Part shown: in pieces, positions 16,063-44,000 of the stretch
Layout: every line of letters begins with the position of its first letter
Position numbering within the stretch: position 1 is the stretch's first letter
From: Isurus oxyrinchus
Lineage: Eukaryota
Reading direction: 5' to 3'
DNA: 64,000 bases
Assembly (NCBI GenBank): GCA_026770705.1
Contig: JANJGN010000646.1
Span: 248,001-312,000 of the forward strand
The notes under the pieces: model-generated
What the model was told of the DNA's origin: nothing
Databases searched by the model: none
The model's input: only the letters and a program-made list of their open reading frames with translations
Position numbers and translations under genes: made by a program

Positions 16063-16179
16063 GGTTAGTCCCAAGTTAGAAAGCAACTCTTTGCCTCGCA
16101 CAGTTAGAAAACTGTTAACCCTTTGTGTGCCAAGAATGTGGCTGAAGGGCCATCGACTGTTCACATGCTTTAAGCTCGA

Positions 16180-18269: not shown

Positions 18270-18386
18270 TTATAAATTCCCATAAACAGAATCCTTGGCA
18301 AATTCACAGTTTGCGTAAAGATCATCATCTGTATCAGGATTGACTCCGCGGTTAGATTTCATTTCCAGATCCTTCTCATCTTTCTT
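18270..18386 (-). CDS. Module C terminal exon with DLYANC and SVYGNL motifs
   Basis: 117 nt from the tattacag acceptor to TAA; KKDEKDLEMKSNRGVNPDTDDDLYANCEFAKDSVYGNL*. Paralogous to the 19020-19124 exon. Confidence 0.65.
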   Translation of the reverse strand, partial: KKDEKDLEMKSNRGVNPDTDDDLYANCEFAKDSVYGNL

Positions 18387-18482
18387 CTGTAATAGAAACA
18401 GAAATGATCAGAGTGACAATCAGAGTGATCAGTGTTTAGAATTATTGATCCAAATCGAAAATTCCACCCACAATGGATACAT

Positions 18483-18886
18483 TAATTATTGATACTGAAC
18501 AGGGTTTGATTATTGATACTGAACGGGGTTTGATTATTGATTCTGAACGGGGTTTGATTATTGATTCTGAACGGGATTTGATTATTGATTCTGAACGGGG
18601 TTTGATTATTGATACTGAACGGGGTTTGATTATTGATTCTGAACGGGGTTTGATTATTGATACAGAATGGGGTTTGTTTATTGATACTGATCGGGGTTTG
18701 ATTATTGATACTGAACGGGGTTTGCTTATTGATATTGAACGGGGTTTGATTATTGATACTGAATGGGGTTTGATTATTGATTCTGAACGGGGTTTGATTA
18801 TTGATACTGAACGGGGTTTGATTATTGATTCTGAACGGGGTTTGATTATTGATACTGATCGGGGTTTGATTATTGATTCTGAACGG
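18483..18886. repeat. 24-bp minisatellite (GGGGTTTGATTATTGATWCTGAAC), about 17 copies
   Basis: Directly visible; intronic between the module C tail exons. Confidence 0.95.
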
Positions 18887-19019
18887 TGTTGGGTGTGAGT
18901 TTGGTTGGGTTTGGGAGTGACTGTATAAAACATTGCAGATACAGGACTGGAGCAGCCATATCAATAACCAGGCTACTGGAGCAGCTGAGAGGCTGGTGAT
19001 CCTGTGGTGTGTGACTCAC

Positions 19020-19124
19020 CTGATTCCTCAAAGCCCAACCACGCTCACAGTTTTCATAAACAGGACCTCGATATTCATCAACACGGTGGTTCGATTTGAT
19101 TCCTGCTTTCCCCTCGCCTCTCTT
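19020..19124 (-). CDS. Module C cytoplasmic exon with PVYENC motif
   Basis: 105 nt, phase 0-0, tattacag/gtgagt; KRGEGKAGIKSNHRVDEYRGPVYENCERGWALRNQ. Confidence 0.6.
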
Positions 19125-19469
19125 CTGTAATAGAGATGGAAATGGACAGAGTGACAATCAACATGATGTGTATTCGGTGTTGGGTTTGATTATTGGGGAG
19201 AGAGTTCCAGATTTCCACTCCCCTTTGTGTGAAGAAGTGCTTCCTGACATCACCCCTGAACGGCCTGGCTCCAATCTGAAGTTCCGGCCCCCTTGTTCTG
19301 GACTCCACCCGACCCCCACCACCCACCCCCACCCGAGGGAATAGCTTCTCTCTATCGACCCTATCGAGTGTTTAATCAGTTTGAACCCCTCAATTAGATC
19401 ACTCCTTAATCTTCTAGGCCCGAGGGAATATAATCGTAGACTGTGTGTAACCTGTCTGCATAATTTAAC

Positions 19470-19775
19470 CAGAAAGATGTTCTGTACAACAGACTTGAGC
19501 CTCACACCCAGATCTCAATAATCAGTAGAAATCTTTCAAAGGCATCAATCATTGGAATCTGTCTTTATAAAGTCACAACATCAACAAAGGACGGTGTTGG
19601 TCATGGAAGTGAGTTCCAATCGTTCCGTTACTTACCCAGGACCTGTCCGACTGCTCGCCTGGGGAGGAACTGCCCACACGCTCTGCTTGGGCTGAATGAC
19701 CTCTTCCTGTGCTGCTCCCTCTGTGTATTTAATGAGAAAGGGTTGATGTGTCTCTGTGAGACAAAATCAGGAATT
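19470..19775 (-). promoter_or_regulatory. Ectopic copy of the promoter/exon-1 module inside module C
   Basis: Near-identical to about 15758-16062; donor at 19636; ETS site degenerate (CAGGAATT). Confidence 0.55.
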
Positions 19776-20009
19776 GGGGAACAATTGTGAAAACCCTTTC
19801 ATTGAAACGTAGGGCCTTAGTGTTGTGTTGTAAACAAACTGTTAACCCTTTGTGTCCTGACTCTGTGACGTGATTCCTGTGTAAAGCTGAGCAGTCGTTG
19901 AGCGAGTTTCAATTCACTGCTCACTCCAGGTGTTGAGGTGGATCTTCTGAAGGAGCAGATGTAGCTCAGCGCTCCTTAAAAATGTGAGAGACTGAACAAC
20001 GTGTAAGAG

Positions 20010-20270
20010 GACGAGAGAGAGAATGAGAAGGAGAGCATTAGTGGAGATAGGAGAGAGAGTGAATGAGAGAGAGAATGAGAAATAGAGCGTTAGTGGAGAT
20101 TGGAGAGAGAGTGAATGATGGAAAGAATGTGAAGGAGTGAATTAGTGGAGATAAGAGAGAGAGTGAATGAGAGAGAGAATGAGAAGGAGAGCATTAGTGG
20201 AGATTGGAGAGAAAGTGAATGAGAGAGAGAATGAGAAGGAGGGCATTAGTGGAGATAAGAGAGAGTGAAT
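20010..20270. repeat. GA-rich tandem repeat
   Basis: Repeated GAGAATGAGAAGGAGAGCATTAGTGGAGAT...GAGTGAAT units. Confidence 0.85.
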
Positions 20271-20581
20271 GAAACATGGAAAATGGAATGAGATTGCATG
20301 CACTAACGAAAGAAAGGTTTTCATTTATATAGCACCTTTCACATCCTCAAGGGGTCACAGGGTATTTTATGGTCCGGGTCAAAACTGCCAGTTACAGGAC
20401 TGAGTTGTCAAACAGGGAGTGTAGGATGAGGTGTTCAATAATGATTGAACATCAAAGCTCTTCAGGGGCTGTGAAGGGTTTTGGGTTGTGAAAGGTGCTA
20501 TAGAAATGCAAGTTTTTTCTATAAGGAGCGAAGGTTGAAGAAAACATTTTCAAAAACAACCAATTAAACCTTCACACTGAC

Positions 20582-20678
20582 TTTCTCACACACTTGAAGA
20601 TGAAGAATCCACTCAGTCCAACACTCAAACAGATTCCAGCTCCAAGCAATCCTGCTTTCCATTCATTGGAATCTCGCC
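20582..20678 (-). CDS. Orphan second transmembrane exon (module C)
   Basis: 97 nt, same phases as 40077-40173; RDSNEWKAGLLGAGICLSVGLSGFFIFKCVRK; ttttacag/gtcagt. Confidence 0.7.
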
Positions 20679-20879
20679 CTGTAAAATCAGCCAATGAATG
20701 ACTCTGGTACAGTTTGAGAATGGTTCCCTATGTACATGTAGTAATTCTGAACTTGTGAAGTGATATTGTCTATGCATGAAAGGTCTATACAAATAACATT
20801 TATCTATGTAATATTTATTGATAATATCCATGTACATGCAGGTTTCTATAAGGAGGATTCACATATAACAGAGGTGCCA

Positions 20880-21905
20880 AGCTGCTGAGGTGACACACAG
20901 GACTACATACACGCCAAACAGCGGAAACAACATGCTATAGACAGAGCAAAGCGATCCCTCAACCAACGGGTCAGATCTAAGCTCTGCAGTCCTGCCACAT
21001 CCAGTCATGAATGGTGATGGACAATTAAAGATCTAACAGGAGGAGGATGTTCCACAAATATCCCCATCCTTAATGATGGGGGAGCTCAGCACATCAGTGC
21101 AAACGACAAGGCTGAAGCATTGGCAACCATGTTCAGCCAGAAGTGCTGAGTGGATGCTCCATCTCGGCCTCCTCCAGAGGGTCCCAGCATCACAGATGTC
21201 AGCTTTCAGACAATTCGATTGACTCCACGTGACATCAGGAATCAGCTGATGATACTGAATACAGCAAAGGCTGTTGGCCCTGGCAATCACCTGGCAACAG
21301 GAAATAATGTGGCTAAGAGCGGGTCAGAGGCTGGGTACTCTGTGGTGAGTAACTCACCTCCTGACTCCCCAAAGCCTGTCCACTATCGACAAGGCAGAAG
21401 TCAGGAGTGTGATGGAATAATCTCCACTTGGCTGGATGAGTGCGGCTCCAACAACACTCAAGAAGCTCGACACCATCCAGGAGCAGCTTGTTTGATCGAC
21501 AGCCCATCCACCAGCATAAACATTCATACCCTCCACCACTGGCACACAATGGCAGCAGTGTGCACCATCTACAAGATGCACTGCAGCAACTCACCTAGGC
21601 TCCTTCGACAGCACTTTCCAAACCCTTAACCTCTTCCACCAGGACAGTTCCAAGTCAGTGTGGTTTGTGATTTGGAGGTGAACATGAGGTGGTGGTCTGC
21701 CCTGGACTTGGAACTATATCGGCCGTTCCTTCACTGTCGCTGGGTCAAAATCCTGGAACTCCCTCCCTAACAGCACTGTGGGTGTGCCTACACCACATGG
21801 ACTGCAGTGGTTAAAGAAGGCAACTCACCACCACCTCCTCAAGGGGCAGTTACAAATGGGCAATAATTTCTGGCCTTGTCAACAATGCCCACATCCCATG
21901 AGCTA
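20880..21905 (+). mobile_element. Non-LTR retrotransposon fragment; same family at about 26040-28075 (minus) and 39485-39940 (plus)
   Basis: Shared KKLDTxQDKAA and VCTIYKMHCS motifs and a shared 3' end ...ATGGGCAAT. Confidence 0.75.
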
Positions 21906-21939
21906 ACAACAAGAGAATGTTCAATTCTGTGTAACTCAC

Positions 21940-22005
21940 GTTCTACAGAGATGGTTATAAATCCCTCCACTGCTCCATGTTCATTCTCTGCCACACACTG
22001 ATAGT
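21940..22005 (-). pseudogene. 5'-truncated fragment of a C2-set exon (relic gene C)
   Basis: Encodes YQCVAENEHGAVEGFITISVE with a C|gtgagt donor. Homology to 521-802 stops abruptly at about 22005. Confidence 0.8.
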
Positions 22006-22204
22006 GATGCAGCACTCATTTAGTTCATGTCGTTGTTTCAATGCTACAAAACCACAGTGCATTCTGGACTATTTCTGCCTGACCTGCTGTCAGATACACA
22101 CAGTCTGACAGAGAGGCGGAAAAGTGGTCCCTAGCAACGTGTGAAACTGTGAACTCGGCTCAGTCAGAATGCACACGCAGACACACACACACATACACAC
22201 ATAT

Positions 22205-24035
22205 AAAAGGGAATTCGATCAGCATGTCTTGCATTCATTGTTGCAGACCAAGTAATCCCTTTTTTGATCTTTGCATCTCTGAAACATTTGATGCTTTTCA
22301 AGATATAAATCTACAGGAGATGGAGGCATTTCATCCTGCACAAGGGGTTTTGAATGATTGATGAATATCTGCATGGTGAGCAGTTCCCATTACCTTGATA
22401 GACCTACAGTGATCAAAGTCCAGCGCTTTGCATTTTTAAGGGAGCCCCTGTTTCAAGTGGACCCTGACACACCTCAGTGAGAACTTTCATGCAACATGTC
22501 TGTAGTGCAATTCATTTGAAGCTTTCCAGAGAAGTGATCAAGTTTGCAGTATCAGCAATCAGGTGACTCGTGACAGCCATTTATGATCAGAGCCTAATCT
22601 TGTACTTTTGAAAAACAGGTCTCCTTTAAACAGTTCAATACATTTTTGGCTCGTTGGTTAAGTTGAAGGAAGCTCTGTTATGACATAACAGATGGTAAAT
22701 GCTGAGCTGTTCAAATCCTGGAGGGAAACTTGAAACAACTGTCACAACTAATTTCCAACTTGTATGTTTTGAGATGTGGGCTTTGAATTCAGTAGTAATG
22801 AGGTTAAGAGGTTTAACAGGTAATTATGGTTGGTTGAAAGAAAGGGTTTAAAATATATTTTCCCCCAAATGCAATTTCCAAAACAAGTCTCTTTGGTTGT
22901 TAAGAATGAACCAATTAAACCATGTTTGGTTGAGTCAAAGAAAGAGTCAGTTTATTAGTTACCTAACTGGAGAAAAAATAATAAAAATGGGACACATTTT
23001 AATTTTTTAATTACACACACATACACACACTCACACAGACAGGTGCACAGACACACACACAGACAGGCTCACACGCACACACAGGCAAATGCACACACAC
23101 AGACACGCTCACACAGACACAACACACACACACACAGACAAGCACACACACACACACAAACAGACACACAGGCACACACACACAGACACACACATAAACA
23201 TACACACAGATATCAGAGGTAAAATAATTATAGAGTCCAATAAAAAATTAAGTGTCATTTGCTTGTACTGCAGCGTCGGCTGTGAAGTTTGAAGCTGTTT
23301 TAAATTAGTTGGTTTTCGGCAGATTCCTGTATTTCATCTGGCTCAGACTTGCACGTTGTTGAAGACTCTCTGTTAGCTTCAGACAGAGAGAGAGAGAGAG
23401 AGAGGAACAGAAAGAGAGGGAGGGAGAAATCATTTCTGCTTTTTTCCAGCAGTGTTTGTGGAAGACTGCCATATTTCTTTTTCCTCCTCCTTTCTCTTAT
23501 ATCTGCTTGGCAGAACCATTTGTTTAACTCCTGTCTGTATATTCCTGAAGGGAATTCAATCAGCATGTTTTGCATTCATTGTTATAGACCAAGTATTCCC
23601 ATTTTTTATCTTTGCATCTCCAAAACATTTGATGCATTTCAAAATATAAATCAACAGGAGATGGGGGTATTGTATCCTCCACAGGGGGTTTTGAATGGCT
23701 GATGATTATCCGCTTGGTGAGCAGTTCCCACTGTTTTGATAGAACTACAGCTGATCAAAGTCCAGCACTTTGCATTTTAATGCCTTCCTTTTAAGAGCGC
23801 CCCTGTTTGAAGTGAACCCTGACAAACACCAGGCATGAACTTCCATGCAACAGGTCTGCATTGCAATTCATTTGAACCTTTCCAGAGAAGTGATCAACTT
23901 CACAGTATCAGCAATCAGATGACTTGTGTCAGCCATTTTTGATCTGTGTACAATCTTGTATTTCTTTGAAAAACAGGCCACTTTCAGACAGTTCAATATG
24001 TCTTTGTTCTGTTAGTTAAGTTGTAGGAAGCTCTT
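22205..24035. repeat. Diverged direct repeats of about 470 bp (22205-22675 and 23546-24035)
   Basis: Both start AAGGGAATTCRATCAGCATGT and are collinear through ...AAGTTG-AGGAAGCTCT. Confidence 0.75.
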
Positions 24036-28268: not shown

Positions 28269-28517
28269 TCAGTTTTTCTGGAACCTGATCTGTGTGTATT
28301 CCGTGTCCTCGCTCCTGTGCACAGTCCTGTCACCGCCGGGCAGCTTTGAAAAGTTGATGTTGGCGTAGAGAAGCTCGTCGGTATTGTCGGGGTTCCCATG
28401 TCCAACATCGCCTCCCACTGGACCTTCAGAGAGATCCCGGGGAGCTGGGGTCTCCCCCTCACTAGTTGTGTCTCTGGTTGTGTTCCGGGGCTCAGTAATC
28501 AGCACGTTCTGTTTACC
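28269..28517 (-). CDS. Duplicate terminal exon (tail 2): ITIM-like LLYANI plus ITSM-like TEYTQI
   Basis: 249 nt, open, intact acceptor; ...DELLYANINFSKL...EDTEYTQIRFQKN*. Confidence 0.7.
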   Translation of the reverse strand, partial: GKQNVLITEPRNTTRDTTSEGETPAPRDLSEGPVGGDVGHGNPDNTDELLYANINFSKLPGGDRTVHRSEDTEYTQIRFQKN

Positions 28518-28702: not shown

Positions 28703-31700
28703 CTCCAACAGTGCAGCACTCCCTCAGTACTGACCCTCTGACAGTGCATCACTCCCTCAATACTGACCCTCCGACAGTGCAGCACTCCCTCAGTACTGAC
28801 CCTCTGACAGTGCAGCACTCCCTCAATACTGACCCTCCGACAGTGCAGCTCTCCCTCAATACTGACCCTCTGACAGTGCAGCACTCCCTCAATACTGACC
28901 CTCCAACAGTGCAGCACTCCCTCAGTACTGACCCTCTGACAGTGCAGCACTCCCTCCGTACTGACCCTCTGACAGTGCAGCACTCCCTCAGTACTGACCC
29001 TCTGACAGTGCAGCACTCCCTCAGTACTGACCTTCTGACAGTGCAGCACTCCCTCAGTACTGACCCTCTGACAGTGCAGCACTCCCTCAATACTGACCCT
29101 CTGACAGTGCAGCACTCCCTCAGTACTGAACCTCCAACAGTGCTGCACTCCCTCAATACTGACCCTCTGACAGTGCAGCACTCCCTCAATACTGACCCTC
29201 TGACAGTGCAGCACTCCCTCAGTACTGACCCTCCGACAGTGCAGCACTCCCTCACTACTGACCCTCTGACAGTGCAGCACTCCCTCACTACTGAACTTCT
29301 GACAGTGCAGCACTCCCTCAGTACTGACCCTCTGACAGTGCAGCACTCCCTCAGTACTGACCCTCCGACAGTGCAGCACTCCCTCAATACTGACCCTCTG
29401 ATAGTGCAGCACTACCTCAATACTGACCCTCCAACAGTGCAGCACTCCCGGAATACTGACCCTCTGACAGTGCAGCACTCCCTCAATACTGACCCTCTGA
29501 CAGTGCAACACTCCCTCAGTACTGACACTCTGACAGTGCAACACTCCCTCAGTACTGACCCTCCAACAGTGCAGCACTCCCTCAATACTGATCCTCTGAC
29601 AGTGCAGCACTCCCTCACTACTGACCCGCTGACAGTGCAGTACTCCCTCAGTACTGACCCTCTGACAGTGCAGCACTCCCTCCGTACTGACCCTCTGACA
29701 GTGCAGCACTCCCTCTGTACTGACCTTCTGACAGTGCAGCACTCCCTCAGTACTGACCCTCTGACAGTGCAGCACTCCCTCAATACTGACCCTCTGACAG
29801 TGCAGCACTCCCTCAGTACTGACCCTCCAACAGTGCTGCACTCCCTCAATACTGACCCTCTGACAGTGCAGCACTCCCTCAATACTGACCCTCTGACAGT
29901 GCAGCACTCCCTCAGTACTGACCCTCCGACAGTGCAGCACTCCCTCACTACTGACCCTCTGACAGTGCAGCACTCCCTCAATACTGACCCTCCGACAGTG
30001 CAGCACTCCCTCAGTACTGACCCTCTGACAGTGCAGCACTCCCTCAGTACTGACCCTCTGACAGTGCAGCACTCCCTCAATACTGACCCTCTGACAGTGC
30101 AGCACTCCCTCAATACTGACCCTCCAACAGTGCAGCACTCCCGGAATACTGACCCTCTGACAGTGCAGCACTCCCTCAATACTGACCCTCTGACAGTGCA
30201 GCACTCCCTCAGTACTGACACTCTGACAATGCAACACTCCCTCAGTACTGACCCTCCAACAGTGCAGCACTCCCTCACTACTGACCCGCTGACAGTGCAG
30301 CACTCCCTCGCTACTGATCCGCTGACAGTGCAGTACTCCCTCAGTACTGACCCTCTGACAGTGCAGCACTCCCTCCGTACTGACCCTCTGACAGTGCAGC
30401 ACTCCCTCCGTACTGACCCTCTGACAGTGCAGCACTCCCTCAGTACTGACCCTCTGACAGTGCAGCACTCCCTCAGTACTGAACTTCTGACAGTGCAGCA
30501 TTCCCTCAGTACTGACCCTCTGACAGTGCAGCACTACCTCAATACTGACCCTCTGACAGTGCAGCACTCCCTCAGTACTGACCCTCCAACAGTGCTGCAC
30601 TCCCTCAATACTGACCCTCTGACAGTGCAGCACTCCCTCAATACTGACCCTCTGACAGTGCAGCACTCCCTCAGTACTGACCCTCCGACAGTGCAGCACT
30701 CCCTCACTACTGACTCTCTGACAGTGCAGCACTCCCTCACTACTGACCCTCTGACAGTGCAGCACTCCCTCAGTACTGACCCTCCGACAGTGCAGCACTC
30801 CCTCACTACTGACTCTCTGACAGTGCAGCACTCCCTCACTACTGAACCTCTGACAGTGCAGCACTCCCTCAGTACTGACCCTCTGACAGTGCAGCACTCC
30901 CTCAGTACTGACCCTCCGACAGTGCAGCACTCCCTCAATACTGACCCTCCAACAGTGCAGCATTCCCTCAGTACTGACCCTCTGACAGTGCAGCACTCCC
31001 TCAATACTGACCCTCTGACAGTGCAACACTCCCTCAGTACTGACACTCTGACAGTGCAACACTCCCTCAGTACTGACCCTCCAACAGTGCAGCACTCCCT
31101 CAATACTGACCCTCTGACAGTGCAGCACTCCCTCACTACTGACCCTCTGACAGTGCAGTACTCCCTCAGTACTGACCCTCTGACAGTGCAGCACTCCCTC
31201 TGTACTGACCCTCTGACAGTGCAGCACTCCCTCACTACTGACCCGCTGACAGTGCAGCACTCCCTCGCTACTGATCCGCTGACAGTGCAGTACTCCCTCA
31301 GTACTGACCCTCTGACAGTGCAGCACTCCCTCCGTACTGACCCTCTGACAGTGCAGCACTCCCTCCGTACTGACCCTCTGACAGTGCAGCACTCCCTCAG
31401 TACTGACCCTCTGACAGTGCAGCACTCCCTCAGTACTGAACTTCTGACAGTGCAGCATTCCCTCAGTACTGACCCTCTGACAGTGCAGCACTACCTCAAT
31501 ACTGACCCTCTGACAGTGCAGCACTCCCTCAGTACTGACCCTCCAACAGTGCTGCACTCCCTCAATACTGACCCTCTGACAGTGCAGCACTCCCTCAATA
31601 CTGACCCTCTGACAGTGCAGCACTCCCTCAGTACTGACCCTCCGACAGTGCAGCACTCCCTCACTACTGACTCTCTGACAGTGCAGCACTCCCTCACTAC

Positions 31701-32892
31701 TGAACCTCTGACAGTGCAGCACTCCCTCAGTACTGACCCTCTGACAGTGCAGCACTCCCTCAGTACTGACCCTCCGACAGTGCAGCACTCCCTCAATACT
31801 GACCCTCCAACAGTGCAGCATTCCCTCAGTACTGACCCTCTGACAGTGCAGCACTCCCTCAATACTGACCCTCTGACAGTGCAACACTCCCTCAGTACTG
31901 ACACTCTGACAGTGCAACACTCCCTCAGTACTGACCCTCCAACAGTGCAGCACTCCCTCAATACTGACCCTCTGACAGTGCAGCACTCCCTCACTACTGA
32001 CCCTCTGACAGTGCAGTACTCCCTCAGTACTGACCCTCTGACAGTGCAGCACTCCCTCTGTACTGACCCTCTGACAGTGCAGCACTCCCTCAGTACTGAC
32101 CTTCTGACAGTGCAGCACTCCCTCAGTACTGACCCTCTGACAGTGCAGCACTCCCTCAATACTGACCCTCTGACAGTGCAGCACTCCCTCAGTACTGACC
32201 CTCCAACAGTGCTGCACTCCCACAATACTGACCCTCTGACAGTGCAGCACTCCCTCAATACTGACCCTCTGACAATGCAGCACTCCCTCAGTACTGACCC
32301 TCCGACAGTGCAGCACTCCCTCACTACTGACCCTCTGACAGTGCAGCACTCCCTCACTACTGACCCTCTGACAGTGCAGCACTCCCTCAGTACTGACCCT
32401 CTGACAGTGCAGCACTCCCTCAATACTGATCATCTGACAGTGCAGCACTCCCTCACTACTGACCCGCTGACAGTGCAGCACTCCCTCACTACTCACCCTC
32501 TGACAGTGCAGCACTCCCTCAGTACTTACCCTCTGACAGTGCAGCACTCCCTCAATACTGATCATCTGACAGTGCAGCACTCCCTCACTACTGACCCGCT
32601 GACAGTGCAGTACTCCCTCAGTACTGACCCTCTGACAGTGCAGCACTCCCTCAATACTGACCCGCTGACAGTGCAGTACTCCCTCAGTACTGACCCTCTG
32701 ACAGTGCAGCACTCCCTCAATACTGACCCTCTGACAGTGCAGCACTCCCTCAGTACTGACCCTCTGACAGTGCAACACACCCTCAGTAATGACCCTCCGA
32801 CAGTGCAGCACTCCCTCAGTACTGACACTTCGACAGTGCAGCACTCCCTCACTACTGACCCTCTGACAGTGCAGCACTCCCTCACTACTGAC
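28703..32892. repeat. 33-bp minisatellite (ACAGTGCAGCACTCCCTCAGTACTGACCCTCTG), about 127 copies, intronic
   Basis: Directly visible. Short copies also occur at about 38190-38270, and in reverse at about 63366-63690 and 63915-64000. Confidence 0.97.
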
Positions 32893-33105: not shown

Positions 33106-33187
33106 CTGGTGCTTCACAGAGAGTGGACTGGGGGTCAATACAATGTCACTGGTCCCTGAAACTCTCTCCTCCATCGCTGTCTTTCTC
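33106..33187 (-). CDS. Duplicate cytoplasmic exon 1 (tail 2)
   Basis: 82 nt, near-identical to 39271-39352 with intact splice sites; RKTAMEERVSGTSDIVLTPSPLSVKHQ. Confidence 0.65.
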
Positions 33188-33729: not shown

Positions 33730-33956
33730 CATTGGAATCTGTCTTTATAAAGTCACAACATCAACAAAGGACGGTGTTGGTGGTGGAAGTGAATTCCAAT
33801 CGTTCCGTTACTTACCCAGGACCTGTCCGACTGCTCGCCTGGGGAGGAACTGCCCACACGCTCTGCTTGGGCTGAATGACCTCTTCCTGTGCTGCTCCCT
33901 CTGTGTATTTAATTAGAAAGAGCTGATGTGTCACTGTGAGACAAAATGAGGAAGTT
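33730..33956 (-). promoter_or_regulatory. Ectopic copy of the promoter/exon-1 module upstream of tail 2
   Basis: Near-identical to about 15838-16062; donor at 33816; GAGGAAGT at 33948-33955. Confidence 0.6.
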
Positions 33957-34079
33957 GGAACAAAGTGAGTGAACAGCACTTTGCTGTGCACTGTCAGTAA
34001 ACCCTGTGTCTGTATAAGAATATAAGAACAGAACAAGTAGGATCAGCTGGACACCCTGACATTTTCATTCCTTATATTC

Positions 34080-35960
34080 CATCCGCTCATTTTTTTATCC
34101 ACTCACTGAAACTATTTATCTCCCTCTGCAGCCTCTTTGTGTCCTCCTCACAACTTGCTTTCCTGCCCAGCTTATATATTTCCTACCTATCTTCACCACA
34201 CAGTCAGAAAATCTGCCTACAGTACAGTCAGTCCCTTCATCCAAGTCACTAATGTAGATTGTGAATAGTTGAGGCCTCAGCACTGATCCCTGTGGCTCTC
34301 CACTAGTTACAGTTTACCAAGCTGAAAATCACCCATTTATCCTGGCTCTCTGTTTCCTGTCAGTTAGCCAGTCCTCTATCCATATTAATATATCACCCCC
34401 AACACCATCCAATTTCACCCTGTGCAGTATCCTTTGATGTGGCACCTTATCGAATGCCTTTTGGAAATCCAATGTCATGAAGAGATATTTGTGTGTAACA
34501 TGTGCTTGGAAATAATATCTTCAAATAGAATTCTAGTGGTGGTCCATGTATAGGTGTGTGTCTGGGTGTGTCTTAATTGGATTAAAGCCAGCTGGTCTGT
34601 GTGCTTTGATGTTTAGTAGTTTTGAGATGTTAATTGGGTGAATTGTGAGGAGAACAGTAAAGTGTTCATTTGTAATTGTTGAATAAACCATTCCAGACAG
34701 GGGGTAAAATCTTGCACCTAGTTAGAAGGAGCCAAAAAGATGTGTTTTTTCTTGAACTTACTAATGAAATTGGTGCTATGAAAGGGGGTTTTATTGTTCG
34801 AAGAGCCGGAGTTCAGAAGACCGAGTGATACAATGGAAAATTTACATTCAAAGGGAAAGCTAGCTATATAAAGGAAGGAGTTTGTGTGTGTGAGGCAGGA
34901 GCATTTCAGACCGAACCAGCCTGTAGCCTCCAACCAACTTGCAAAGGAACCTCATTCGGAACTCGTAATGTCAAATGTGCTTTGCCTGGTGTCTATATTA
35001 TGTCAATGGTTCATTGTTGCCTTAGTAGAGATTTACGTGAGGTTGATTAATTTGGGGATTTGTTAAAATGTTATTATAGTAGTTATTTGTAGCCAATGTG
35101 TATGTGTTAAATTTGTTGTTAAATTAATAAATGGTTTATTTGGTTTCATATAAAAGACCCAAAATCCTCGGTGGTCTTTTTCCTACTGAATTCAAAGTCT
35201 TCATCTCGAAATTACAAACAGCAAAATTAGGTTATGACAGTTGTTTCAATTTTCCCTCTGGGATTTGAACAACTCAGCCTTTACCCTTGGCTGTGTCATA
35301 GTCCCTAATACACCACATCTACAGATTCCCCTTTATCCAATCCACTTGTTACATCCTCGAGGAAATCTAATTATTTTTTCAAACATGATATCCCTTTCAC
35401 AAACCCATGTTGACTCTGTCTGATTGAATTATGGTTTTCTAAATGTCCTGCTGCTCCCTCCTTCATAATGAATTCTGGTATTTTCCCAATGACAGATATT
35501 AGACTAACTGACCTGTAGTTTCTTGCTTTCTGCCTCCTCCCTTTATTGAGCAGAGATGTTTTATTTATGTTTTTCCAATCCGCTGGGACCTTCCCATAAT
35601 CTAAGGAATTCTGGAAGATTACATCCAATGCATCCACCGTCTCTGCAGCCATTTCCTTTCAGACCCTCACATTCAGGCCGTCTGCTCCATGGGACTTGTC
35701 AGCATTTGTCTCATTAGTTTTCTTAATACTTTTTCTCTGGTGATAGTGATTGTTTTATGTTCCTCCCTCCTTGTTGCACCGTGACTTTCTCCTGCTATTG
35801 GGATGGTTTTAGAGATTTTTACTGTGAAGACAGACACAAAATTCTTGTTGAAAGTCTCTGTCATTTCCTGTTTCCCATTATTAATTCCCCAGTCTGATTT
35901 TCTATGTGTCCCATTATTACTGTAGCTTCTCTCTTATTTTAATGTACAACATCTCACTGT
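34080..35960 (-). mobile_element. CR1 LINE fragment interrupted by an LTR-like element (about 34473-35300)
   Basis: IFQNSLDYGKVPADWK...NYRSVSL motifs. The inserted element is homologous to about 38415-39135. Confidence 0.7.
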
Positions 35961-37791
35961 CATTGTTTATGGTTCTTGCTAGTTTACTCTCATATCATCA
36001 TTTCTGCCTCTTTATTATTCTGCTGGGATCCTTCAGGTCAGATTTTTGACCTCGGCAGGGGTGCACAGGGCTGGGGGCGGTGAGGAATCCGACTATCGCC
36101 TGCGATCAGCTCCGCGCTGCGATTTTACGCAGCCGGGCTAATTAAGGCCTGCCAGCATAAGATGTGGCTGCAGAATGAGTGCAAAGGGGCGGGCAGGCGT
36201 GTGTGCTTAGTGACTGCTTGGACCAATGGTGACCCAGCGGCCGATTGAAATCTGGCCACGGCAACCTTCAAAAGGCTTCCGGTGAAGGACGTTGAAATCA
36301 TGGTGGACAGCGTTCCGGGTGGAGGGGCATTCGGCCCTGCGTTTCCCTGATGAGTGATGCTGCCCTCCTGGAGGGTGTGGATATTGACCCCACTGCTCCC
36401 CCTCCCCCACTCCGCCATTCTATCCTGGGAGACCTGCCAGGTTCCTTGTTCCAGCTGCGATGGGCAGCCCTTCCACACTTTCCTGTGGGCCCCGCCCTTC
36501 ATGTCCAAAAGCGCTAAGTTTGAGCAGGGATGGAGAAATGAACAGGGGGTGTGGGATAAGTGTGGGGGTCTCACAGCCAGAACAGATGCTGCCTCAGGAG
36601 GGGGGGGGAGGTTTCACCAGCTCTCTGTCTTAACAACATCGTAACCACAGTGTGAAGATTGTCCCCATTCCCTGTATCTTAATAATATTGTAAAGACAAA
36701 TGGGAGATGTGCTGCAATCGCTGAGAAAGTACTTGGTGTGCTTACAGCACCACCACTGGCAAGAGACTGTAAGTACAGTGTGACATGTTTACATGGGAAA
36801 TTTTCATGATAAATGTGGACACAAGAATTTACATAATTTGGTGGGGAAATGCAATGACATGAATTAACAGATTGGAGCAGGGAGGTTGTCCCAGAGTAAG
36901 ATGTTTAATAAAAATATATCTGTACAGAGTTGTCTGGGCATTTCAATCCCTTGTGACAATAAATGTAATATTATAGAAAATGCAAAAGCTTCTTGTAATC
37001 TATCACAGAATAAACAAGATGCAGAATTCAGAAAGCACATTCTGAAATGTTAACAAGGTTCAGTGATGTCACATTTCTGCTAATTACTATTCGGCCATGT
37101 TGGCTGCATGCAGTCAGGCAGTCCCTCGGTTGTGATGTGTCCACACAGCAGGACTGGGATGCATCAGCATCAAAGGACATGCTTAGTTGTTGCCGTGCAA
37201 TGCATTTATTGTGAGCCTGTTGCACACATGCCCTGTCGAAGGATTCTCCGTGTTTCCATTCTGAATCGAGGCAGATCAACGTTACTACAACAACTTGCAT
37301 TTATATAGCACACTTAAAGTAGCAAACTGTCCCAAAGCTCTTCAGGGGATTGTTAACCACATATAAATCCATCTCTGAGACAAATAATGAGATATAAGGG
37401 ACAGGTGACAAAAAGCTGAGTTAACAAAGCCAGTTAATAAGGACCATGTTAAAGGAGGAGAGAGATAGACAGAGATGCAGAGGGAGAGAGACAGAGAGAG
37501 AGAGACAAAGAAGGAGAGAGAGACAGAGAGAGAGAGAGAGACAGACAGAGAAGGAGAGAGAGATAGAGAGACAGACTGGGAGAGAGAGAGACACTGAATC
37601 TCTGTCCCCAATGACTCAGCATCAAGTCGTCTCTGGGGAAACGTTTCATTCCAAACCACACCAACCACAGACCCATTCAGTCCCTTCCTCCCTCTCTCCC
37701 CCTCTCCCCCAGTGGGTTGTCTCATGTTTCAAGGAATCACAATCCCTGCCCCCATCCACAAACCTCCTCACCCCCTCTCCCCGTTTCACAC

Positions 37792-38040
37792 TCAGTTTCG
37801 CTTGAATCTGATCTGTGCGTATTCCGTCTCCTCTTCCCTGTGGACAGACCCATCACCACTGGGCACCCTGAAGACTTGGGGATTGGCGTAGAGAAGCTCA
37901 GCGGGATTGTCAGGGTTCCCATGTCCAGCACCACCTCCCACTGGACCTTCAGAGAGACCCCGGGGAACTGGGGTCTCCCCCTCGCTAGTTGTGTCTCTGG
38001 TTGTGTTCCGGGGCTCAGAAATCAGCACGTTCTGTTTACC
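37792..38040 (-). CDS. Gene B terminal exon (tail 1): degenerate ITIM LLYANP plus ITSM-like TEYAQI
   Basis: 249 nt from the tctgtag acceptor to TGA; ...ELLYANPQVF...EETEYAQIRFKRN*. Confidence 0.85.
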   Translation of the reverse strand, partial: GKQNVLISEPRNTTRDTTSEGETPVPRGLSEGPVGGGAGHGNPDNPAELLYANPQVFRVPSGDGSVHREEETEYAQIRFKRN

Positions 38041-41000
38041 CTACAGAGAAATGGAAACAGAAGACATCCTCACATCATTTACTGGCACTGATAGGGTTAA
38101 ATTATTGTGCAGCCTCATTAGTGTCAGTCGTGTCTCAGTTGGTTTTACTCTCTCTCTCATATCATAAAAAAGAAACCACCTATGACAGGGCAGCACTCCC
38201 TCAGTACTGACCCCCGACAGCGCAGCACTCCCTCAGGACTGACCCTCTGTCAGTCTCGCACTCCCTCGGTAATGTCTCTGGCGAGTGCCGGCTTGGATTC
38301 TGCACTCAGGTGCCTGACGTGAGGCTCATTAACAAGAACCTTGTAATCAGAGAGAGGATGAGAGGGAAGAGAAAGAGAGAAAGGGATAGAGATAGGGTGT
38401 TATTAATCTATTAATGTATGTAATGTAAGTGGAAATTGTCTTTTTAAACAGGGGTTTAGTCTGTGGTTGTGTCTGTGAGTGTTTTAATTGGATTAAAGCC
38501 AGCCAGTCCGGGTACTTTGATGTCAAGTAGTTTTGAGATGTAAACAAAGAGGTAAAGGGGTAATTTCCATTTTTAAACAGAGCATTCAATGTCTGGGAGT
38601 GAAATCTTAAACGAATCAATGTTTATATTACTAATAAAATTGATACGATGAAGGGTGGAGTTCAAAGGTCCTGATGATTCAATGAGAATTTACATTCAAA
38701 GAGAAGCATTGGGTATAACTTGAGCAGTTTTGTGTGTGCAGAGCAGACGCTTGTAACATCAAAGCAGCTGTAAGCCTACACCTGTCTGCAAAGGAACCAA
38801 AGTGAAAGGAACCTCATTTGGAATTTGTGAGGTGAAAATGCTTTGCCTGGAATCTGCTTAAAGTCTATGGGTTGTCTTAGAGGAGATTAGTTTGAGAATT
38901 TGTTAAAAAGTTATGATAATACTAGTTTGTAGCCATGTGCATATGTTTAACTTGTGTTAATTAATAAATGTCTCATGTAGTTTGATATAAAACCATCTCG
39001 AGAACTGGTGTTCTTATTCCTGAATTTAGAGCTGCATCTCAAACATTCCACTGGGAAATATAGGTTATGACAGTTGTTTAAAGTTTCCCTCTGGGATTTT
39101 AAACAACAGCCTTTACCAGTTGTTGTGTCATAACAGAGAGACTGCATGATACTGAACCATTGCTGACTCCACAGGTACAAATCAGTGGGTAACTGGGCTG
39201 GGAATCTGGGACACGTGTTGTCTACACACTGAGATTGAAGCTTTGGAGTGAGTGTAAACAGCTCCTGTACCTGGTGCTTCACAGAGAGTGGACTGGGGGT
39301 CAATGCAATGTCTCTGGTCCCTGAAACTCTCTCCTCCATCGCTGTCTTTCTCCTGCAATAACACAATATCACACTGTGGTTATCATATAGCAGAGAATCA
39401 GTGCAGCACAGACACAGAGCCCACTGTAACCTTACACCAACAACTGGGACTGTCTCTTTAAATCACTTCTGCACAAAGCACAGAATCAAGAAGCTTGACA
39501 CCATCCAGGACAAAGCAGCCCGATTGATCTACACCCCATACACCACATTAAACATTCACTCCCTCCACCATGAACACACAGTGGCAGCAGTGTGTGTACC
39601 ATCTACAAGATGCACTGCAGCAAATCAGCAAGGCTCCTTCGACAGCTCCTTCCAAACCCACGACCTCTACCATCTAGAAGGACAAGGGCAGCAGACACAT
39701 GGGAACACCACCACCCGGAAGTTCCCCTCCAAGTCACTCACCATCCTGACTTGGAAATATATCACCGTTCCTTCACTGTCGCTGGGTTAACATCCTGGAA
39801 CTCTCTCTCTAACAGCACTGTGGGTGTACCAACACCACATGGACTGCAGCGGGTCAAGAAGGCAGCTCACCACCACCTTCTCAATGGGCAATTAGAGATG
39901 GGCAATTTAATAACGGCCTCACCATTGACAGTCACATTCGATTAAAGAATTTAAAATCTCACAGCTCAGGAGGAAGCCAGTCAGCCCATCGTGCCTGTGC
40001 TGGCCCTTTGTAAAAACTGTCCAATTAGTCCTAAACAAATGTTTATATTAAAATCAAGTTAAATCTTCAGACTTACTTTCTCACACAGATGAAGATGAAG
40101 ATTCCAGCCAGGAAAACACTCAACATGATCCCAGCCGTGAACAATCCTACTGTCCATTTACTGGAGTCTCTACCTGTAAAAACAGCCATTAATTACTGCA
40201 CTACAGGTTTACAATGATGCTCCGATGTATCTCGAGAAGCGATACACTCACTCAGTGTTTAAATACTCATTCTCGGGCAATGCTGACATTTATTGTCCAT
40301 CCCTAGTTTCCCCTTGAGAAGGTGGTGGGGAGTCTTCCTCCTGAACCACTGGTTTGTCCCAAACTGGGAGACCAGTTCAGAGGGCAGGTAAGAGTTAACC
40401 ATGTTGGTGTCTGAGACTGGAGTCACATATACACCCAGACCTGTTAAAATGGACAGGTTTCCCTCCCTTAAGATAATTAGTGACCCATATTATATATGTA
40501 ATTTCTATATATATGTATCAACTAACCTCCCTAAAATAATCAATTATCACCTCAATTTCATGCTGTTGTTTGTGGAATCTTGCTGTGCACAAATCAGCTG
40601 TTGCGTTTCCTACATGATGACAGTGAGCTCACTTTGAAACTGCTTCACTGGTTATCGAGCGTTTTGGGAATTCCTAAGTATTTTATCAACGCAAGTCTTA
40701 TTTTTCGATTTAATCCATGTAACATTTATATATAATATTTATCAATGTGATCCCTACAGCATAAATTTATAATATTTATCAATATAATCTATGTAACATT
40801 TATATATAATTTTTATCCATTTAATCTCTGTAATATTTATATATAATGTTTCTCGATTTAATCCATGTAACATTTATATATAATATTGCCCAATGTAATA
40901 TATGTAACATTTATATATATTTATCCATTTAATCTATGTAACATTTATATATAATATTTCTCAATGTAATCTATGTAACATTTATATATAATATTTCTCA

Positions 41001-44000
41001 ATGTAATCTATGTAATATTTATATATAATATTTAGTCGTTTGGGAGGAGAACCTGAGTATTGCTGAGAAAGGACATTTTGTCAAAGCTTTCTGTCTTGCA
41101 CCCAATGAAGCAGCTTATCTGGGGGAGAGGGTTCCAGATTTCCACTCCCCTTTGTGTGAAGAAGTGCTTCCTGACATCACCCCCTGAATGGCCTGGCTCC
41201 AATTTGACCAAGTGTTGCCATTGTCACATGAGATCAGGTGATTCAAAGCTTGGTCAAAGGGGTAAGTTCTAAAGAGCATTTTAGAGGAGGTAGAGAGAGA
41301 GGTGGAGAGGTTGAGGGAGGAAATTCTCGAGTTTAGGGATCAATCCAGCTGAGTGGAGATCGATCCTGAGCGAGTCTCTCACCTTTGACCCACACATACA
41401 CCTTGAACATGGCTTCCCCGTGTGGGTTTTGAACCGAGCAGGATGCAATCACTCCCCCCTCATCCTGGGGTCTCATCAGGGTGAGGGAACCAGTCACCAG
41501 ATGCCCATCTCTGACCTGCCACGACACAAAACCTCCGTGTGTTTGGTTACCACTGATGTTGGCACTGGGCAGGTGCCAGGTGAGGTCTCCGGGTGGGTTG
41601 GAGGTGGCCACACAGATGCAGGTGACCCCCTCTGATCTCCGAGTGCACTCCGACTGCTGGGAAATCTCCGGCTTATCTGAGGAGGGAAGGATAACAATAA
41701 GACAACGTCATAGCAAAGTTAGAGCGTAAGATAGAATCTTAACACTGAAACACTCATTCCTGCCTTTGTTACCTCTGCACTCAACTATCCCAACACTCTC
41801 CTGCCCGACCTCCCATCTTCCACTCTCCGTAAACATCAGCTCATCCCAAACTCTGCTGTCCCCATGTCCTAACTCACACCGAGTCCCGTTCACACATCAC
41901 TCCCTGTTGGTCACTGAGGTACACTGGCTCCCGGTCCGACAATGCCACAATTTTAAAATTCACATTGTTTCAAATCCCTCCTTACCCCCTCCCTATCTCT
42001 GATACCTCCTTCAGACCCTTCAACCCTCCCTATCTCTGTAACCTCCTCCAGCCCCTTCAACCCTCCCTATCTCTGTAACCTCCTCCAGCCCCTACAACCC
42101 TCCCTATCTCAGTAACCTCCTCCAGCCCCTTCAACCCTCCCTATCTCTGTAAACTCCTCCAGAACCTTCAACCCTCCCTATCTCTGTAACCTCCTCCAGC
42201 CCCTTCAACCCTCCCTATCTCTGTAACCTCATCCAGCCCTTACAACCCTCCCTATCTCTGTAACCTCCTCCAGCCCCTACAACCTTCCTTATCTCTGTAA
42301 CCTCATCCAGCCGATTCAACCGTCCCTATCTCTGTAACCTCCTCCAGCCCCTTCAACCTTCCTTATCTCTGTAAACTCCTCCAGCCTCTACAACCCTCCG
42401 AGATCTCTGTGCACCTCCAATTCCAGCTTCTTGACATTCCCCCGATTCCTATCGCTCCACCATTGGCAGCCGTGCCTTCAGCTGCCTGGATCCTAACCTC
42501 TGGAATTCCCTCCCTCATTTCTCACCTCCTTCGGACAAAATCTGACCACCACCAAAAGCATCTTCCCTTCACCCCCATCCCGTTGGCATTCCACAGGGAT
42601 CATTCCCTCCAGGACACCCTGGTCCACTCCTCCATCACCCCTAGCACCTCAACCCTCTCCGATGACATCTTCCCATGTATTTGCAGAAAGTGCAACACCT
42701 GCCCCTTTACTTCCTCCCCCCTCACTGTCCAATGACCCAAACACTCCTTCCAGGTGAAGCAGCGCTTCATGTACACTTCCTTCAATTTAATCTACTGCAT
42801 TCGCTGCTCCCAATGTGGTCTCCTCTACATTGGAGACACCAAACACAGACTGGGTGATCGCTCTGATGAACACCTTCGGTCTGTCCACAAGCATGACCCA
42901 GACCTCCCTGTCGCTTGCCATTTTAACACTCCACCCTGCTCTCATGCCCACATGTCCGTCCTTGGCCTGCTGCATTGTTCCAGTGAAGCCCAACACAAAC
43001 TGGAGGAACAACACCTCATCTTCCGACCTGGCACTTTACAGCCTTCCCGACTGAATATTGAATTCAACAATTTCAGATCATGAACTCTCTCCTCGATCTT
43101 CACTGCTTTTTGAACCCTTTTTTAATGTATTCATTTTAATTGTTTTTTTTGTTAACTGTTTTCCACTTATTTTTATTATTATTATTTGAAATTCATTTCC
43201 ATTTTTATTGATTGTTTTATCCGCAGATTTTAGTCTATTTTCGATCTTTATTCCCTCCACCGTCCCCTCCCCCCTGCCACACCCCCACGAGGGCCATCTG
43301 TCTCTTTCCAGAGTGCTTACCCTGGTCCGCCCATTATCACACTCTGCTTAATGTCACCATTAGCACCTCCTTTATCCAATACCACCACTGTTAACAACCC
43401 TTTGACCTTTTGTTTATGACATTTTTCACAATCTCTCCATTGCCTCCACCTATCGCTGGTTTTCTATCCAGCTCCACCTGTCCCATCGCCCCCCCTTAGA
43501 CAGGATATATTTCACCACATGTCTACTTCCCTTTAGCTCTGAAGAGGAGTCTTACGGACTCCAAACGCTAACCCTGTCTTTCTCTCCACAGATGCTGCCA
43601 GATGCTCAGAATCAGCTGGATGGACAGAAAGACCAATGAGTGGCTTAGATCAAGAGGAGACGTTCAGCAATTAAAAGGGTTGTTCAGGACAGTTAGAGAG
43701 AGAAAGGTCGTCAAGTATGGAGATTGGAAACGAAGACCTGACAGCCTTGTCCTCACAACCATTGAAGGAGAAACTGAGAGCAAAAACAGAAAGGGAGAGG
43801 AAAAATTGGGTGTGTGGATAACGTGGACTGAGCGAGGATTGAAGAAAACTGGATTAAAAACAACACGATCCCAATGGCTCCACGGAGACCACGGAGACAA
43901 CAAACAAACAAATGTATCTCCACACTCACATTCCACAGTGATGGTTATGAACCCCTCCACTGCTCCATGTTCATTCTCTGCCACACACTGATAATCTCCA

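What the first reader, a model, noticed from the sequence alone, without database searches (positions are those of the whole stretch)
18270..41676. One ectodomain followed by three phase-compatible signalling tails: possible tail-switching receptor
Seen: downstream of gene B's last Ig exon are TM1 + tail 1 (LLYANP / TEYAQI), an intact duplicate tail 2 (LLYANI / TEYTQI) with no ectodomain or TM of its own, and TM2 + tail 3 (YENC, YANC, SVYGNL). TM1 splices in frame to either 82-nt exon, and the 41383 donor is in phase with TM2. Inference: alternative 3' splicing could switch one ectodomain between weak-inhibitory, strong-inhibitory and adaptor-recruiting outputs. That would be a paired-receptor system within one transcription unit, possibly combined with V-exon choice. 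The conservative alternative is remnants of deleted paralogues, which the truncated exon at 21940-22005 supports.
Basis: partly seen in the sequence, partly recalled or inferred. Interest (0 to 1): 0.8.

Follow-up and report, generated by a model that had tools for sequence, protein, structure and literature searches.

The report
Shark Siglec gene with spare tails
A shark immune-receptor gene is followed by a spare copy of its signalling tail and by the leftover end of a deleted neighbour gene; related shark genes are annotated as splicing such spare tails in, but nothing yet shows that this gene does.

Summary
They lie in a shark Siglec-type receptor cluster. Public contigs at least 95% alike, so family level only, show last Ig exon > TM1 > 82-nt exon > tail exon. 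They cannot tell whether tail 2 is used.

The second 82-nt exon plus tail 2 is the second cassette of a tandem tail duplication. Six gene models in great white and basking shark share it. In this window the donor needed for appending reads AG|AT. Tail 1 is therefore terminal, and tail 2 is reachable only by exon skipping, which is unverified.

It is the intact 3' end of another Siglec gene type whose front was deleted.

Two-tail switching is plausible but unproven. Three-way switching is unlikely. The scan met doubled tails before on other pieces of this genome (s1-865407, s1-872013, s1-865411).

The parts
41383..41676 (-). Gene B last Ig exon (294 nt, phase 1 to 1)
   Evidence: AG/GT and frame. 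Pfam Ig_3 E 9.6e-05, below the curated cut-off. 89.6% to great white P0020 over 106 aa. Joint 40171|41381 in contigs of X5 and X6.
40077..40173 (-). TM1 exon (97 nt, phase 1 to 2), no charged residue in the core
   Evidence: Joint 39351|40076 in X5 and X6.
39271..39352 (-). 82-nt juxtamembrane exon, copy 1 (phase 2 to 0)
   Evidence: Joint to the tail exon in X6 and X1.
37792..38040 (-). Tail 1 exon. LLYANP is not an ITIM (P at +3). TEYAQI follows, then stop. The site used as an internal donor in relatives reads AG|AT here.
   Evidence: An X1 contig identical over 37700-37829 runs unspliced past the stop.
33816..33900 (-). Copy of the 85-nt 'exon X' element between tail 1 and cassette 2. AG/GT are intact, but it is out of frame with the next exon.
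33106..33187 (-). 82-nt exon, copy 2 (first exon of tail cassette 2)
   Evidence: 2 of 82 nt differ from copy 1. Flanking intron is 98.9% and 92.9% alike.
28708..32892 (.). 33-bp satellite, 126.8 copies, filling the intron of cassette 2
   Evidence: A few units also lie in the matching intron of cassette 1 near 38200-38300.
28269..28517 (-). Tail 2 exon: LLYANI (ITIM), TEYTQI, stop. Carries the AG|GT site five codons before the stop.
   Evidence: 88-90% alike to tail-2-type modules of great white and basking shark.
21934..22005 (-). 3' stump of a C2-type Ig exon (last 22 codons plus donor). No acceptor, and no 5' part anywhere in 22-28 kb.
20582..20678 (-). TM2 exon (97 nt), tail-3-type anchor
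   Evidence: 31 of 32 aa identical to great white P0062. 75.6% nt to the TM1 region.
19636..19720 (-). Exon X (85 nt, phase 2 to 0), needed to join TM2 to the YxNC exons.
19020..19124 (-). First YxNC exon (YENC)
   Evidence: 34 of 35 aa identical to P0062. Skipped in great white isoform P0063.
18270..18386 (-). Second YxNC exon (YANC, YGNL) with stop
   Evidence: 33 of 38 aa identical to P0062.

Best explanation
Gene B is an inhibitory-type shark Siglec gene. It has a leader, three V exons, C2 exons and TM1, and its message normally ends at tail 1.

Behind it lie two kinds of leftover.

(1) The second 82-nt exon plus tail 2 is the second cassette of a two-exon tail duplication common in this gene family in lamniform sharks. 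In relatives, a donor five codons before the stop of the first tail lets the second cassette be appended in frame. In gene B that site reads AG|AT. Tail 1 is therefore a terminal exon and cassette 2 is stranded. It can be reached only if transcription runs 4.6 kb or more past tail 1 and the splicing machinery skips tail 1. That could use TM1 > second 82-nt exon, or first 82-nt exon > tail 2. I expect this to be at most a minor event here.

(2) The stump of an Ig exon, TM2, exon X and the two YxNC exons are the intact 3' end of a neighbouring Siglec gene of another tail type. A deletion removed the front of that gene.

Shown here: the exons, their phases, the splice-site letters, the homologies, the isoforms annotated in the relative, and family-level splicing into the tail exon. 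Inferred: that tail 1 is the usual end, that cassette 2 is little used here, and that a deletion made the remnant.
For: - Exon structure and phases.
- Exon map with no spare TM or ectodomain exons.
- Contigs of 2 of 4 runs (X5, X6) join Ig > TM1 and TM1 > 82-nt exon. X6 and X1 join the 82-nt exon to a tail exon.
- An X1 contig with 0 differences over 37700-37829 runs unspliced across the tail 1 stop into its unique 3' flank.
- AATAAA lies 582 nt after the tail 1 stop.
- The internal donor site reads AG|AT in tail 1 and AG|GT in tail 2.
- Tandem-tail models occur in 8 protein ids (6 gene models) of great white and basking shark. In all 8 the first module is the YxxP type, as in gene B.
- None of the listed contigs carries the second letter specific to the second 82-nt exon, 39305 G>A (6 rows not shown).
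- Remnant: the stump is 92.9% and 90% alike to the C2 exons of genes B and A. TM2, exon X and the YxNC exons are 97%, about 86%, 97% and 87% identical to great white P0062. That gene has its own V domain, which is absent from the window.
- In the great white, accession runs on one 646-kb contig place a tail-1+2 gene, a tail-3 gene and a tail-1 gene in succession.
Against: - Cassette 2 is fully intact: acceptors, donor, open frame, canonical ITIM and TEYxxI.
- Its tail type is the ancestral one, kept in other shark orders (14 of 20 distinct non-lamniform modules).
- For a similar great white gene, NCBI lists isoforms X4 and X5 that skip tail 1 in favour of tail 2. It also lists an out-of-frame isoform X3 that an ab initio predictor would hardly invent. 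Such skipping therefore probably happens in a relative.
- I could not lay reads on cassette 2, TM2 or tail 3.
- The laid contigs are family-level: many carry letters of paralogues. Contigs also drop rare forms.
- The tail-3 module is also intact and lies in the same orientation downstream, so occasional read-through splicing cannot be excluded. One basking shark model, P0096, is a read-through chimera between neighbouring genes.
Confidence: 0.55

Rival explanations
1. True two-way tail switch. Gene B regularly makes two proteins with one ectodomain. One ends in tail 1 (YxNP plus TEYAQI, no canonical ITIM). The other ends in tail 2 (ITIM plus TEYTQI). The choice depends on whether tail 1 is spliced and polyadenylated or skipped.
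For: - Phases fit and the acceptors are letter-for-letter alike.
- Great white isoforms X4 and X5 use exactly these routes, and all six isoforms of that gene end in the tail 2 exon.
- The order type-1 module then type-2 module is shared with three great white models: the P0015 group, P0033 and P0031.
- Both tail types are old. A type-1-like tail occurs in a catshark model, P0046.
Against: - No RNA evidence in this species.
- The proximal acceptors are transcribed first, with introns of 0.72 and 1.23 kb against 6.9 and 10.75 kb. The longer route includes a 4.2-kb satellite.
- Gene B's tail 1 resembles the great white P0020 type, whose five listed isoforms all stop at the natural tail 1 stop.
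- Database isoforms are automatic models, and I could not see their evidence lines.
Confidence: 0.27
2. Three-way switch. The last Ig exon can also splice to TM2, giving the same ectodomain a YxN-rich tail 3.
For: - Donor 41383 and the TM2 acceptor are both phase 1.
- All four tail-3 exons are intact.
- Read-through between neighbouring Siglec genes is modelled in basking shark, P0096.
Against: - The acceptor lies 20.7 kb downstream, past two tail exons with their stops and poly(A) hexamers.
- A stump of the module's own Ig exon sits just before it.
- In great white and basking shark this module belongs to separate genes with another V domain. None of the six isoforms of the tail-1+2 gene uses it.
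Confidence: 0.06
3. Cassette 2 is a small gene of its own. The exon-X copy at 33816-33900 would serve as a first exon spliced to the second 82-nt exon and tail 2, giving a receptor-less ITIM protein. This is the reading of note s1-870944.
For: The same element is used as an upstream 5' exon in a great white model (N-terminus of P0034). Copies of it sit about 400 bp before the leader exons of genes A and B.
Against: - The element ends in phase 0 and the 82-nt exon needs phase 2. The join runs into a stop after 13 codons.
- The window copy has GTG where the great white model starts with Met.
Confidence: 0.03

Closest known systems
Great white shark 'myelin-associated glycoprotein-like' gene, isoforms X1-X6 (XP_041037215 to XP_041037221; NCBI automatic models)
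   Same: Same exon types in the same order: last Ig exon, TM, 82-nt exon, type-1 tail (Y..P), second 82-nt exon, type-2 tail (ITIM, TEYTQIRFQKN). Its isoforms append, skip or swap the cassettes.
   Different: Gene B's tail 1 lacks the internal donor (AG|AT) and keeps the natural stop, like the P0020 type. Gene B has three V exons and lacks one C2 exon. Orthology is not one-to-one: gene B's last Ig exon and tail 1 are nearer to P0020.
Shark tail-3-type Siglec genes (great white XP_041037222 to XP_041037225; basking shark XP_078390089 to XP_078390091)
   Same: TM2, exon X and both YxNC exons match at 87-97% identity and in the same order. The first YxNC exon is optional in the great white.
   Different: The window copy has no leader, V or C2 exons of its own. 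Only the last 22 codons of the preceding Ig exon remain.
MAG (Siglec-4) L-MAG / S-MAG
   Same: One Siglec ectodomain with two alternative cytoplasmic ends made by alternative splicing. Source: abstracts of PMC3683929 and PMC2116301, seen in the search listing.
   Different: MAG uses inclusion or skipping of one small exon carrying a stop. It has no duplicated two-exon tail cassette, and its tails are not ITIM variants of each other (the last point is recalled).
NKp44 (NCR2) isoforms 1-3
   Same: Alternative splicing gives one Ig receptor a long tail with an ITIM-like motif or short tails without it (passages of PMC13072323).
   Different: No duplicated cassettes. The receptor also signals through DAP12, and that paper found the ITIM-like tyrosine acts as an endocytosis motif rather than as an inhibitor.
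Mammalian CD33-related Siglecs and the Siglec-5/14 pair
   Same: V-set plus C2-set ectodomain. The tail has a proximal ITIM and a distal TEY..I-type motif. The cluster evolves fast and has paired members (V exon hits Siglec-5, -7, -8, CD33 and MAG; abstract of PMC4042635 in the listing; the tail motif comparison is recalled).
   Different: In mammals the paired outputs sit on separate genes. Here the spare tails sit behind one gene. Orthology of the shark cluster to CD33-related Siglecs was not tested.

Membership tests
Siglec family (Ig-type sialic-acid lectins) | N-terminal V-set domain alike to known Siglec V domains | tested here: met
   V exon 53204-53683 against solved structures: Siglec-5 9.7e-15, MAG 8.7e-14, Siglec-7 1.8e-13, Siglec-8, CD33, Siglec-10, sialoadhesin. 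33 distinct sequences matched at E up to 0.001.
Siglec family (Ig-type sialic-acid lectins) | Conserved arginine of the sialic-acid site (FFR-type motif on strand F; the position is recalled) | tested here: met
   2 of 3 V exons of gene B read YFFRIEF. The outermost reads YFFTIKF. Binding itself was not tested.
Siglec family (Ig-type sialic-acid lectins) | C2-set Ig domains between V and membrane | tested here: met
   Exon 43931-44209: Ig_3 2.5e-12, I-set 1.9e-10. Exon 41384-41674: Ig_3 9.6e-05, below the cut-off.
Inhibitory Siglec tail (ITIM plus distal ITIM-like/ITSM motif) | Proximal (S/I/V/L)xYxx(I/V/L) and distal TxYxx(V/I) | tested here: met
   Tail 2 meets both: LLYANI and TEYTQI. Tail 1 meets only the distal one: LLYANP has P at +3, TEYAQI fits. 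Phosphatase recruitment is not testable here.
Receptors with alternative cytoplasmic tails by splicing (MAG L/S, NKp44 type) | Two or more tail-coding 3' exon sets behind one TM exon, same strand, compatible phases | tested here: met
Receptors with alternative cytoplasmic tails by splicing (MAG L/S, NKp44 type) | Transcripts that join the shared exons to each tail | tested here: inconclusive
   Family-level contigs join the 82-nt exon to a tail exon. The short sides and loose ends (10-20 letters) fall within the first 21 letters, which both tails share. A relative's annotation lists such isoforms.
Paired activating/inhibitory receptors | Partner with a basic residue in the membrane core that recruits an ITAM adaptor | tested here: not met
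   The TM2 core has no K/R/D/E. The K just outside the membrane is present before TM1 too. An arginine-bearing anchor exists elsewhere in the family (P0039) but not in this stretch.
Tail-3-type shark Siglec genes | TM2-type anchor, 85-nt exon X, one or two YxNC exons ending in YGN[LV] | tested here: met
   All four exons are present, in order and in frame, with AG/GT. Own ectodomain exons are not present.

The most novel reading that the evidence does not exclude
In lamniform shark Siglecs the cytoplasmic tail is built from tandem two-exon cassettes that splicing can string together, skip or swap. One ectodomain could then carry a YxNP/TEY-only tail, a full ITIM tail, or both in series. Gene B would be a case where loss of the serial donor turned 'append' into an either/or switch between a weak and a strong inhibitory tail.
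Probability: 0.25. Interest if true: 0.65.

Novelty: new variant of a known kind. Interest (0 to 1): 0.4.

Why it matters
Immune receptors usually change their signal by gene duplication, giving paired genes. A few do it by splicing one small exon. A receptor family that keeps tandem tail cassettes and mixes them by splicing would be a third route.

It would occur in sharks, where ITIM-bearing Siglec clusters are not described in the papers I could search. A 2020 survey of fish Siglecs states that fish genomes lack CD33-related Siglecs and does not mention sharks (passages of PMC7226832).

For this locus the practical value is more modest. It shows how birth-and-death evolution leaves intact-looking tail exons behind a working gene. 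It also warns that such exons, and automatic isoform models built on near-identical exons, need transcript proof.

Tried and rejected
- Tail 2 peptide alone against the 90%-clustered protein collection gave no candidate. The length window of 45-143 aa excludes full proteins.
- I looked for a TM exon belonging to cassette 2, and for an 82-nt-type exon near TM2. Neither exists.
- My own idea that a second donor 4 nt after the TM2 donor makes TM2 > first YxNC exon in frame was dropped once exon X was found.
- Mini-gene reading (exon-X copy > second 82-nt exon): out of frame, with a stop after 13 codons.
- Activating-anchor reading of TM2: no charged core residue.
- dN/dS between tail 1 and tail 2 (0.7 overall) is uninformative because the pair is a mosaic. 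dS is 0.065 in the first 40 codons and 0.46 in the last 42. The intron before the exon is 98.1% alike and the ITIM half 76.7%. This reflects gene conversion or two old tail types, not a clean duplicate.
- Loose ends at 39270 and 40076 read only 10-17 letters, which both copies share.
- The X1 loose end at 41676 belongs to a paralogue. It differs at 3 of 30 letters from the window's C2-1 exon end.
- Literature. 'Siglec'+'shark': 325 papers, 15 listed, none on shark Siglec genes. 'Siglec'+'cartilaginous fish'+'ITIM': 3 papers, all on CEACAM. 'Siglec'+'elasmobranch': 6 papers, 5 listed, none on topic. The whale shark genome paper names Siglecs once, as a gene family, and points to Supplementary file 9, which I could not see.

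Full report
WHAT IS THERE

The stretch is read on the minus strand. Going down in coordinates, it holds the following:
- Last Ig exon of gene B, 41383-41676, phase 1 to 1.
- TM1, 40077-40173, 97 nt.
- An 82-nt exon, 39271-39352.
- Tail 1, 37792-38040, with LLYANP and TEYAQI.
- A second 82-nt exon, 33106-33187.
- Tail 2, 28269-28517, with LLYANI and TEYTQI.
- The last 22 codons of an Ig exon, 21934-22005.
- TM2, 20582-20678.
- Two YxNC exons, 19020-19124 and 18270-18386.

All have AG acceptors and GT donors. The stump of the Ig exon has only its donor.

TM1 ends in phase 2 and both 82-nt exons start in phase 2. The 41383 donor and the TM2 acceptor are both phase 1.

One thing was missed. TM2 (phase 2) does not join the first YxNC exon (phase 0) in frame. 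An 85-nt exon at 19636-19720 lies between them and restores the frame.

CONTEXT

tblastn with 8 shark proteins maps every coding exon of the window to the minus strand.
- Gene B: leader 62511-62591, three V exons, two C2-type exons, then the exons above.
- Gene A: leader 15434-15514, two V exons and two C2-type exons, running off the window's start.
- Blocks 515-16064 and 43924-63141 are 90-98% alike, a tandem duplication of about 43 kb.
- No V, C2 or TM exon lies between tail 1 and tail 2, or in 22-28 kb.

FAMILY

- A V exon matches solved Siglec-5, MAG, Siglec-7, Siglec-8 and CD33 V domains at E 1e-14 to 1e-11.
- Pfam finds Ig domains in the C2 exons.
- A profile of the two tails found 11 proteins in 1.84 billion. 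The 10 I looked up are NCBI automatic models named Siglec-8, -10, -11, -12, -13, CD33-like or hemicentin-like, plus one uncharacterized protein. They come from basking shark, great white, zebra shark, epaulette shark, catsharks and a houndshark.
- The window is nearest to the two lamniform species but identical to neither.

RNA

The run search returned only Logan contigs, with RNA status guessed.
- Contigs join 41381|40171 and 40076|39351 in X5 and X6 (2 of 4 runs).
- Contigs join 39271|38039 in X6 and, at low depth, in X1.
- X9 showed none of these among the listed rows. 13 joints and 259 loose ends were not shown.
- These contigs are 95-99% alike to the window and often carry letters of paralogues. 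For example, 39313 T>A appears in 16 contigs of X1. They show the splice pattern of the closest expressed family members, not of gene B alone.
- The short side of the 82-nt > tail joint (20 letters) and the loose ends at 39270 and 40076 (10-17 letters) fall where both copies are identical. They cannot tell tail 1 from tail 2.
- One X1 contig is identical to the window over 37700-37829. It runs unspliced from tail 1 across its stop into the unique flank.
- No listed contig carries the second letter specific to the second 82-nt exon (39305 G>A). Six rows were not shown.
- An X9 contig stops being alike exactly at 37808, the internal-donor position, with 30 letters unlaid. This is a hint of serial splicing in some paralogue. 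I could not read those letters.

CASSETTE 2

Among the 117 shark proteins gathered, 46 distinct tail modules were found.
- The ITIM type (tail 2 type) is the form in other shark orders: 14 of 20 distinct modules. One is YxxP and 5 are other.
- In the two lamniform species, 15 of 26 are the YxxP type (tail 1 type), 8 are the ITIM type and 3 are other.
- Nine protein ids carry two modules. One of them (P0045) is a fusion of two genes.
- The other eight represent six gene models on five contigs, some of which may be haplotype copies. All eight have an 82-nt-exon peptide between the modules, no TM between them, and a YxxP-type first module, as in gene B.

The six isoforms of one great white gene are the key.
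- X1, X2 and X6 leave tail 1 five codons before its stop and continue in frame into the second 82-nt exon and tail 2.
- X3 leaves at the same point and enters tail 2 directly, out of frame.
- X4 goes TM > second 82-nt exon > tail 2.
- X5 goes first 82-nt exon > tail 2.

As I recall NCBI's practice, extra isoforms need transcript support, and the out-of-frame X3 is not something a predictor would invent.

WHY GENE B DIFFERS

- At the internal-donor site tail 2 reads AG|GT but tail 1 reads AG|AT. The serial form cannot be made through that site, and tail 1 keeps its natural stop.
- This is like the great white P0020 type, whose listed isoforms all end there.
- The two cassettes are a mosaic. The 105 nt of intron before the tail exon are 98.1% alike, the first 120 nt of the exon 94.2%, and the ITIM half 76.7% (dS 0.065 against 0.46).
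- The 82-nt exon (97.6%) is no better kept than its flanks (98.9% and 92.9%). This speaks for gene conversion between old tail types and gives no exon-specific sign of selection.
- Using cassette 2 would need read-through past tail 1, where AATAAA lies 582 nt after the stop. It would also need a choice of distal acceptors over identical proximal ones, across a 4.2-kb satellite of 126.8 units of 33 bp.

TM2 AND TAIL 3

- TM2, exon X and the two YxNC exons match the great white protein P0062. Identities are 31 of 32, about 25 of 29, 34 of 35 and 33 of 38 residues.
- The same tail occurs in models from at least seven further shark genera. It is a real, old tail type.
- In great white and basking shark it belongs to separate genes with another V domain. 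That V domain is absent from the window.
- On one 646-kb great white contig the accession runs go tail-1+2 gene, then tail-3 gene, then tail-1 gene. This is the same order as gene B, remnant, gene A here. Adjacency is my inference.
- The stump at 21934-22005 is 92.9% and 90% alike to the C2 exons of genes B and A, and it breaks off inside the exon.

HOW IT MOST LIKELY WORKS

Gene B makes an inhibitory-type Siglec ending in tail 1. Its proximal tyrosine has lost the ITIM fit (P at +3) but keeps YxN and the distal TEYAQI. Cassette 2 is a stranded second module. The tail-3 module is a remnant.

My odds:
- About 0.55 for this reading.
- About 0.27 that tail 1/tail 2 switching is a regular feature of gene B.
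- About 0.06 for the three-way switch.
- About 0.03 for a mini-gene from the exon-X copy, which is out of frame.

KNOWN PARALLELS AND NOVELTY

- One ectodomain with alternative tails is known for MAG (abstracts in the listing) and for NKp44 (passages).
- I found no description of tandem tail cassettes used in series or as alternatives. My searches found no paper on shark Siglec clusters.
- A fish Siglec survey says fish lack CD33-related Siglecs and does not mention sharks.
- The family is, however, already in automatic annotation.
- Earlier agents of this scan reached the same reading of doubled and fourfold tails on other pieces of this genome.

LIMITS

- Exons were never joined into a spliced model for any search.
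- The N runs were not touched.
- Supplementary files were not consulted. Supplementary file 9 of the whale shark paper may list the family.

Noticed in passing
window 15923-16009, 19636-19720, 33816-33900, 63000-63086 (minus): An element of about 230-300 bp holding the 85-nt 'exon X' occurs four times, 94-96% alike, each with AG/GT. It serves as a cytoplasmic exon in tail-3 genes. It also sits about 400 bp before the leader exons of genes A and B. A great white model starts in it (P0034), and a basking shark model reads through it into the next gene (P0096).
   Followed up: partly
window 28708-32892; also about 38200-38300 and 63358-63720 (inverted): A 33-bp satellite grew to 126.8 copies in the intron of cassette 2, while the matching intron of cassette 1 has only a few units. 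Contig depth over 38102-38369 was enormous in all four runs, so the repeat is abundant in those data.
   Followed up: partly
window 515-16064 vs 43924-63141: A tandem segmental duplication of about 43 kb (90-98% alike) carries the front halves of genes A and B. Inside gene B, a 3.6-kb unit holding a V exon is itself doubled (49671-53717 vs 53236-57286, 97%).
   Followed up: no
window 56764-57252 (minus): The outermost V exon of gene B reads YFFTIKF where the two inner V exons read YFFRIEF. The arginine expected for sialic-acid binding is missing from the outermost domain.
   Followed up: partly
window 37808 (X9 record 24): A contig 95-98% alike to tail 1 stops matching exactly at the internal-donor position, with 30 further letters unlaid. 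This may be a serially spliced paralogue.
   Followed up: no
window 41676 (X1 loose end) and 48610-48640: An X1 contig joins the last Ig exon to the end of a C2-1-type exon, skipping the C2 exon at 43931-44209. It differs at 3 of 30 letters from the window's own C2-1 end, so it is a paralogue with the great white P0020 layout.
   Followed up: partly
window 18485-18890: A 24-bp satellite (16.9 copies) lies in the intron between the two YxNC exons. It gives long spurious ORFs on both strands.
   Followed up: no
proteins P0032, P0041, P0043, P0116 (great white): Annotated isoforms of related genes drop or truncate V exons.
   Followed up: no
all three tail types: Every tail type has tyrosines followed by N at +2: YANP, YANI, YENC, YANC, YGNL. 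This fits the recalled pYxN rule for Grb2-type SH2 domains and may be a shared feature of the family's signalling.
   Followed up: no
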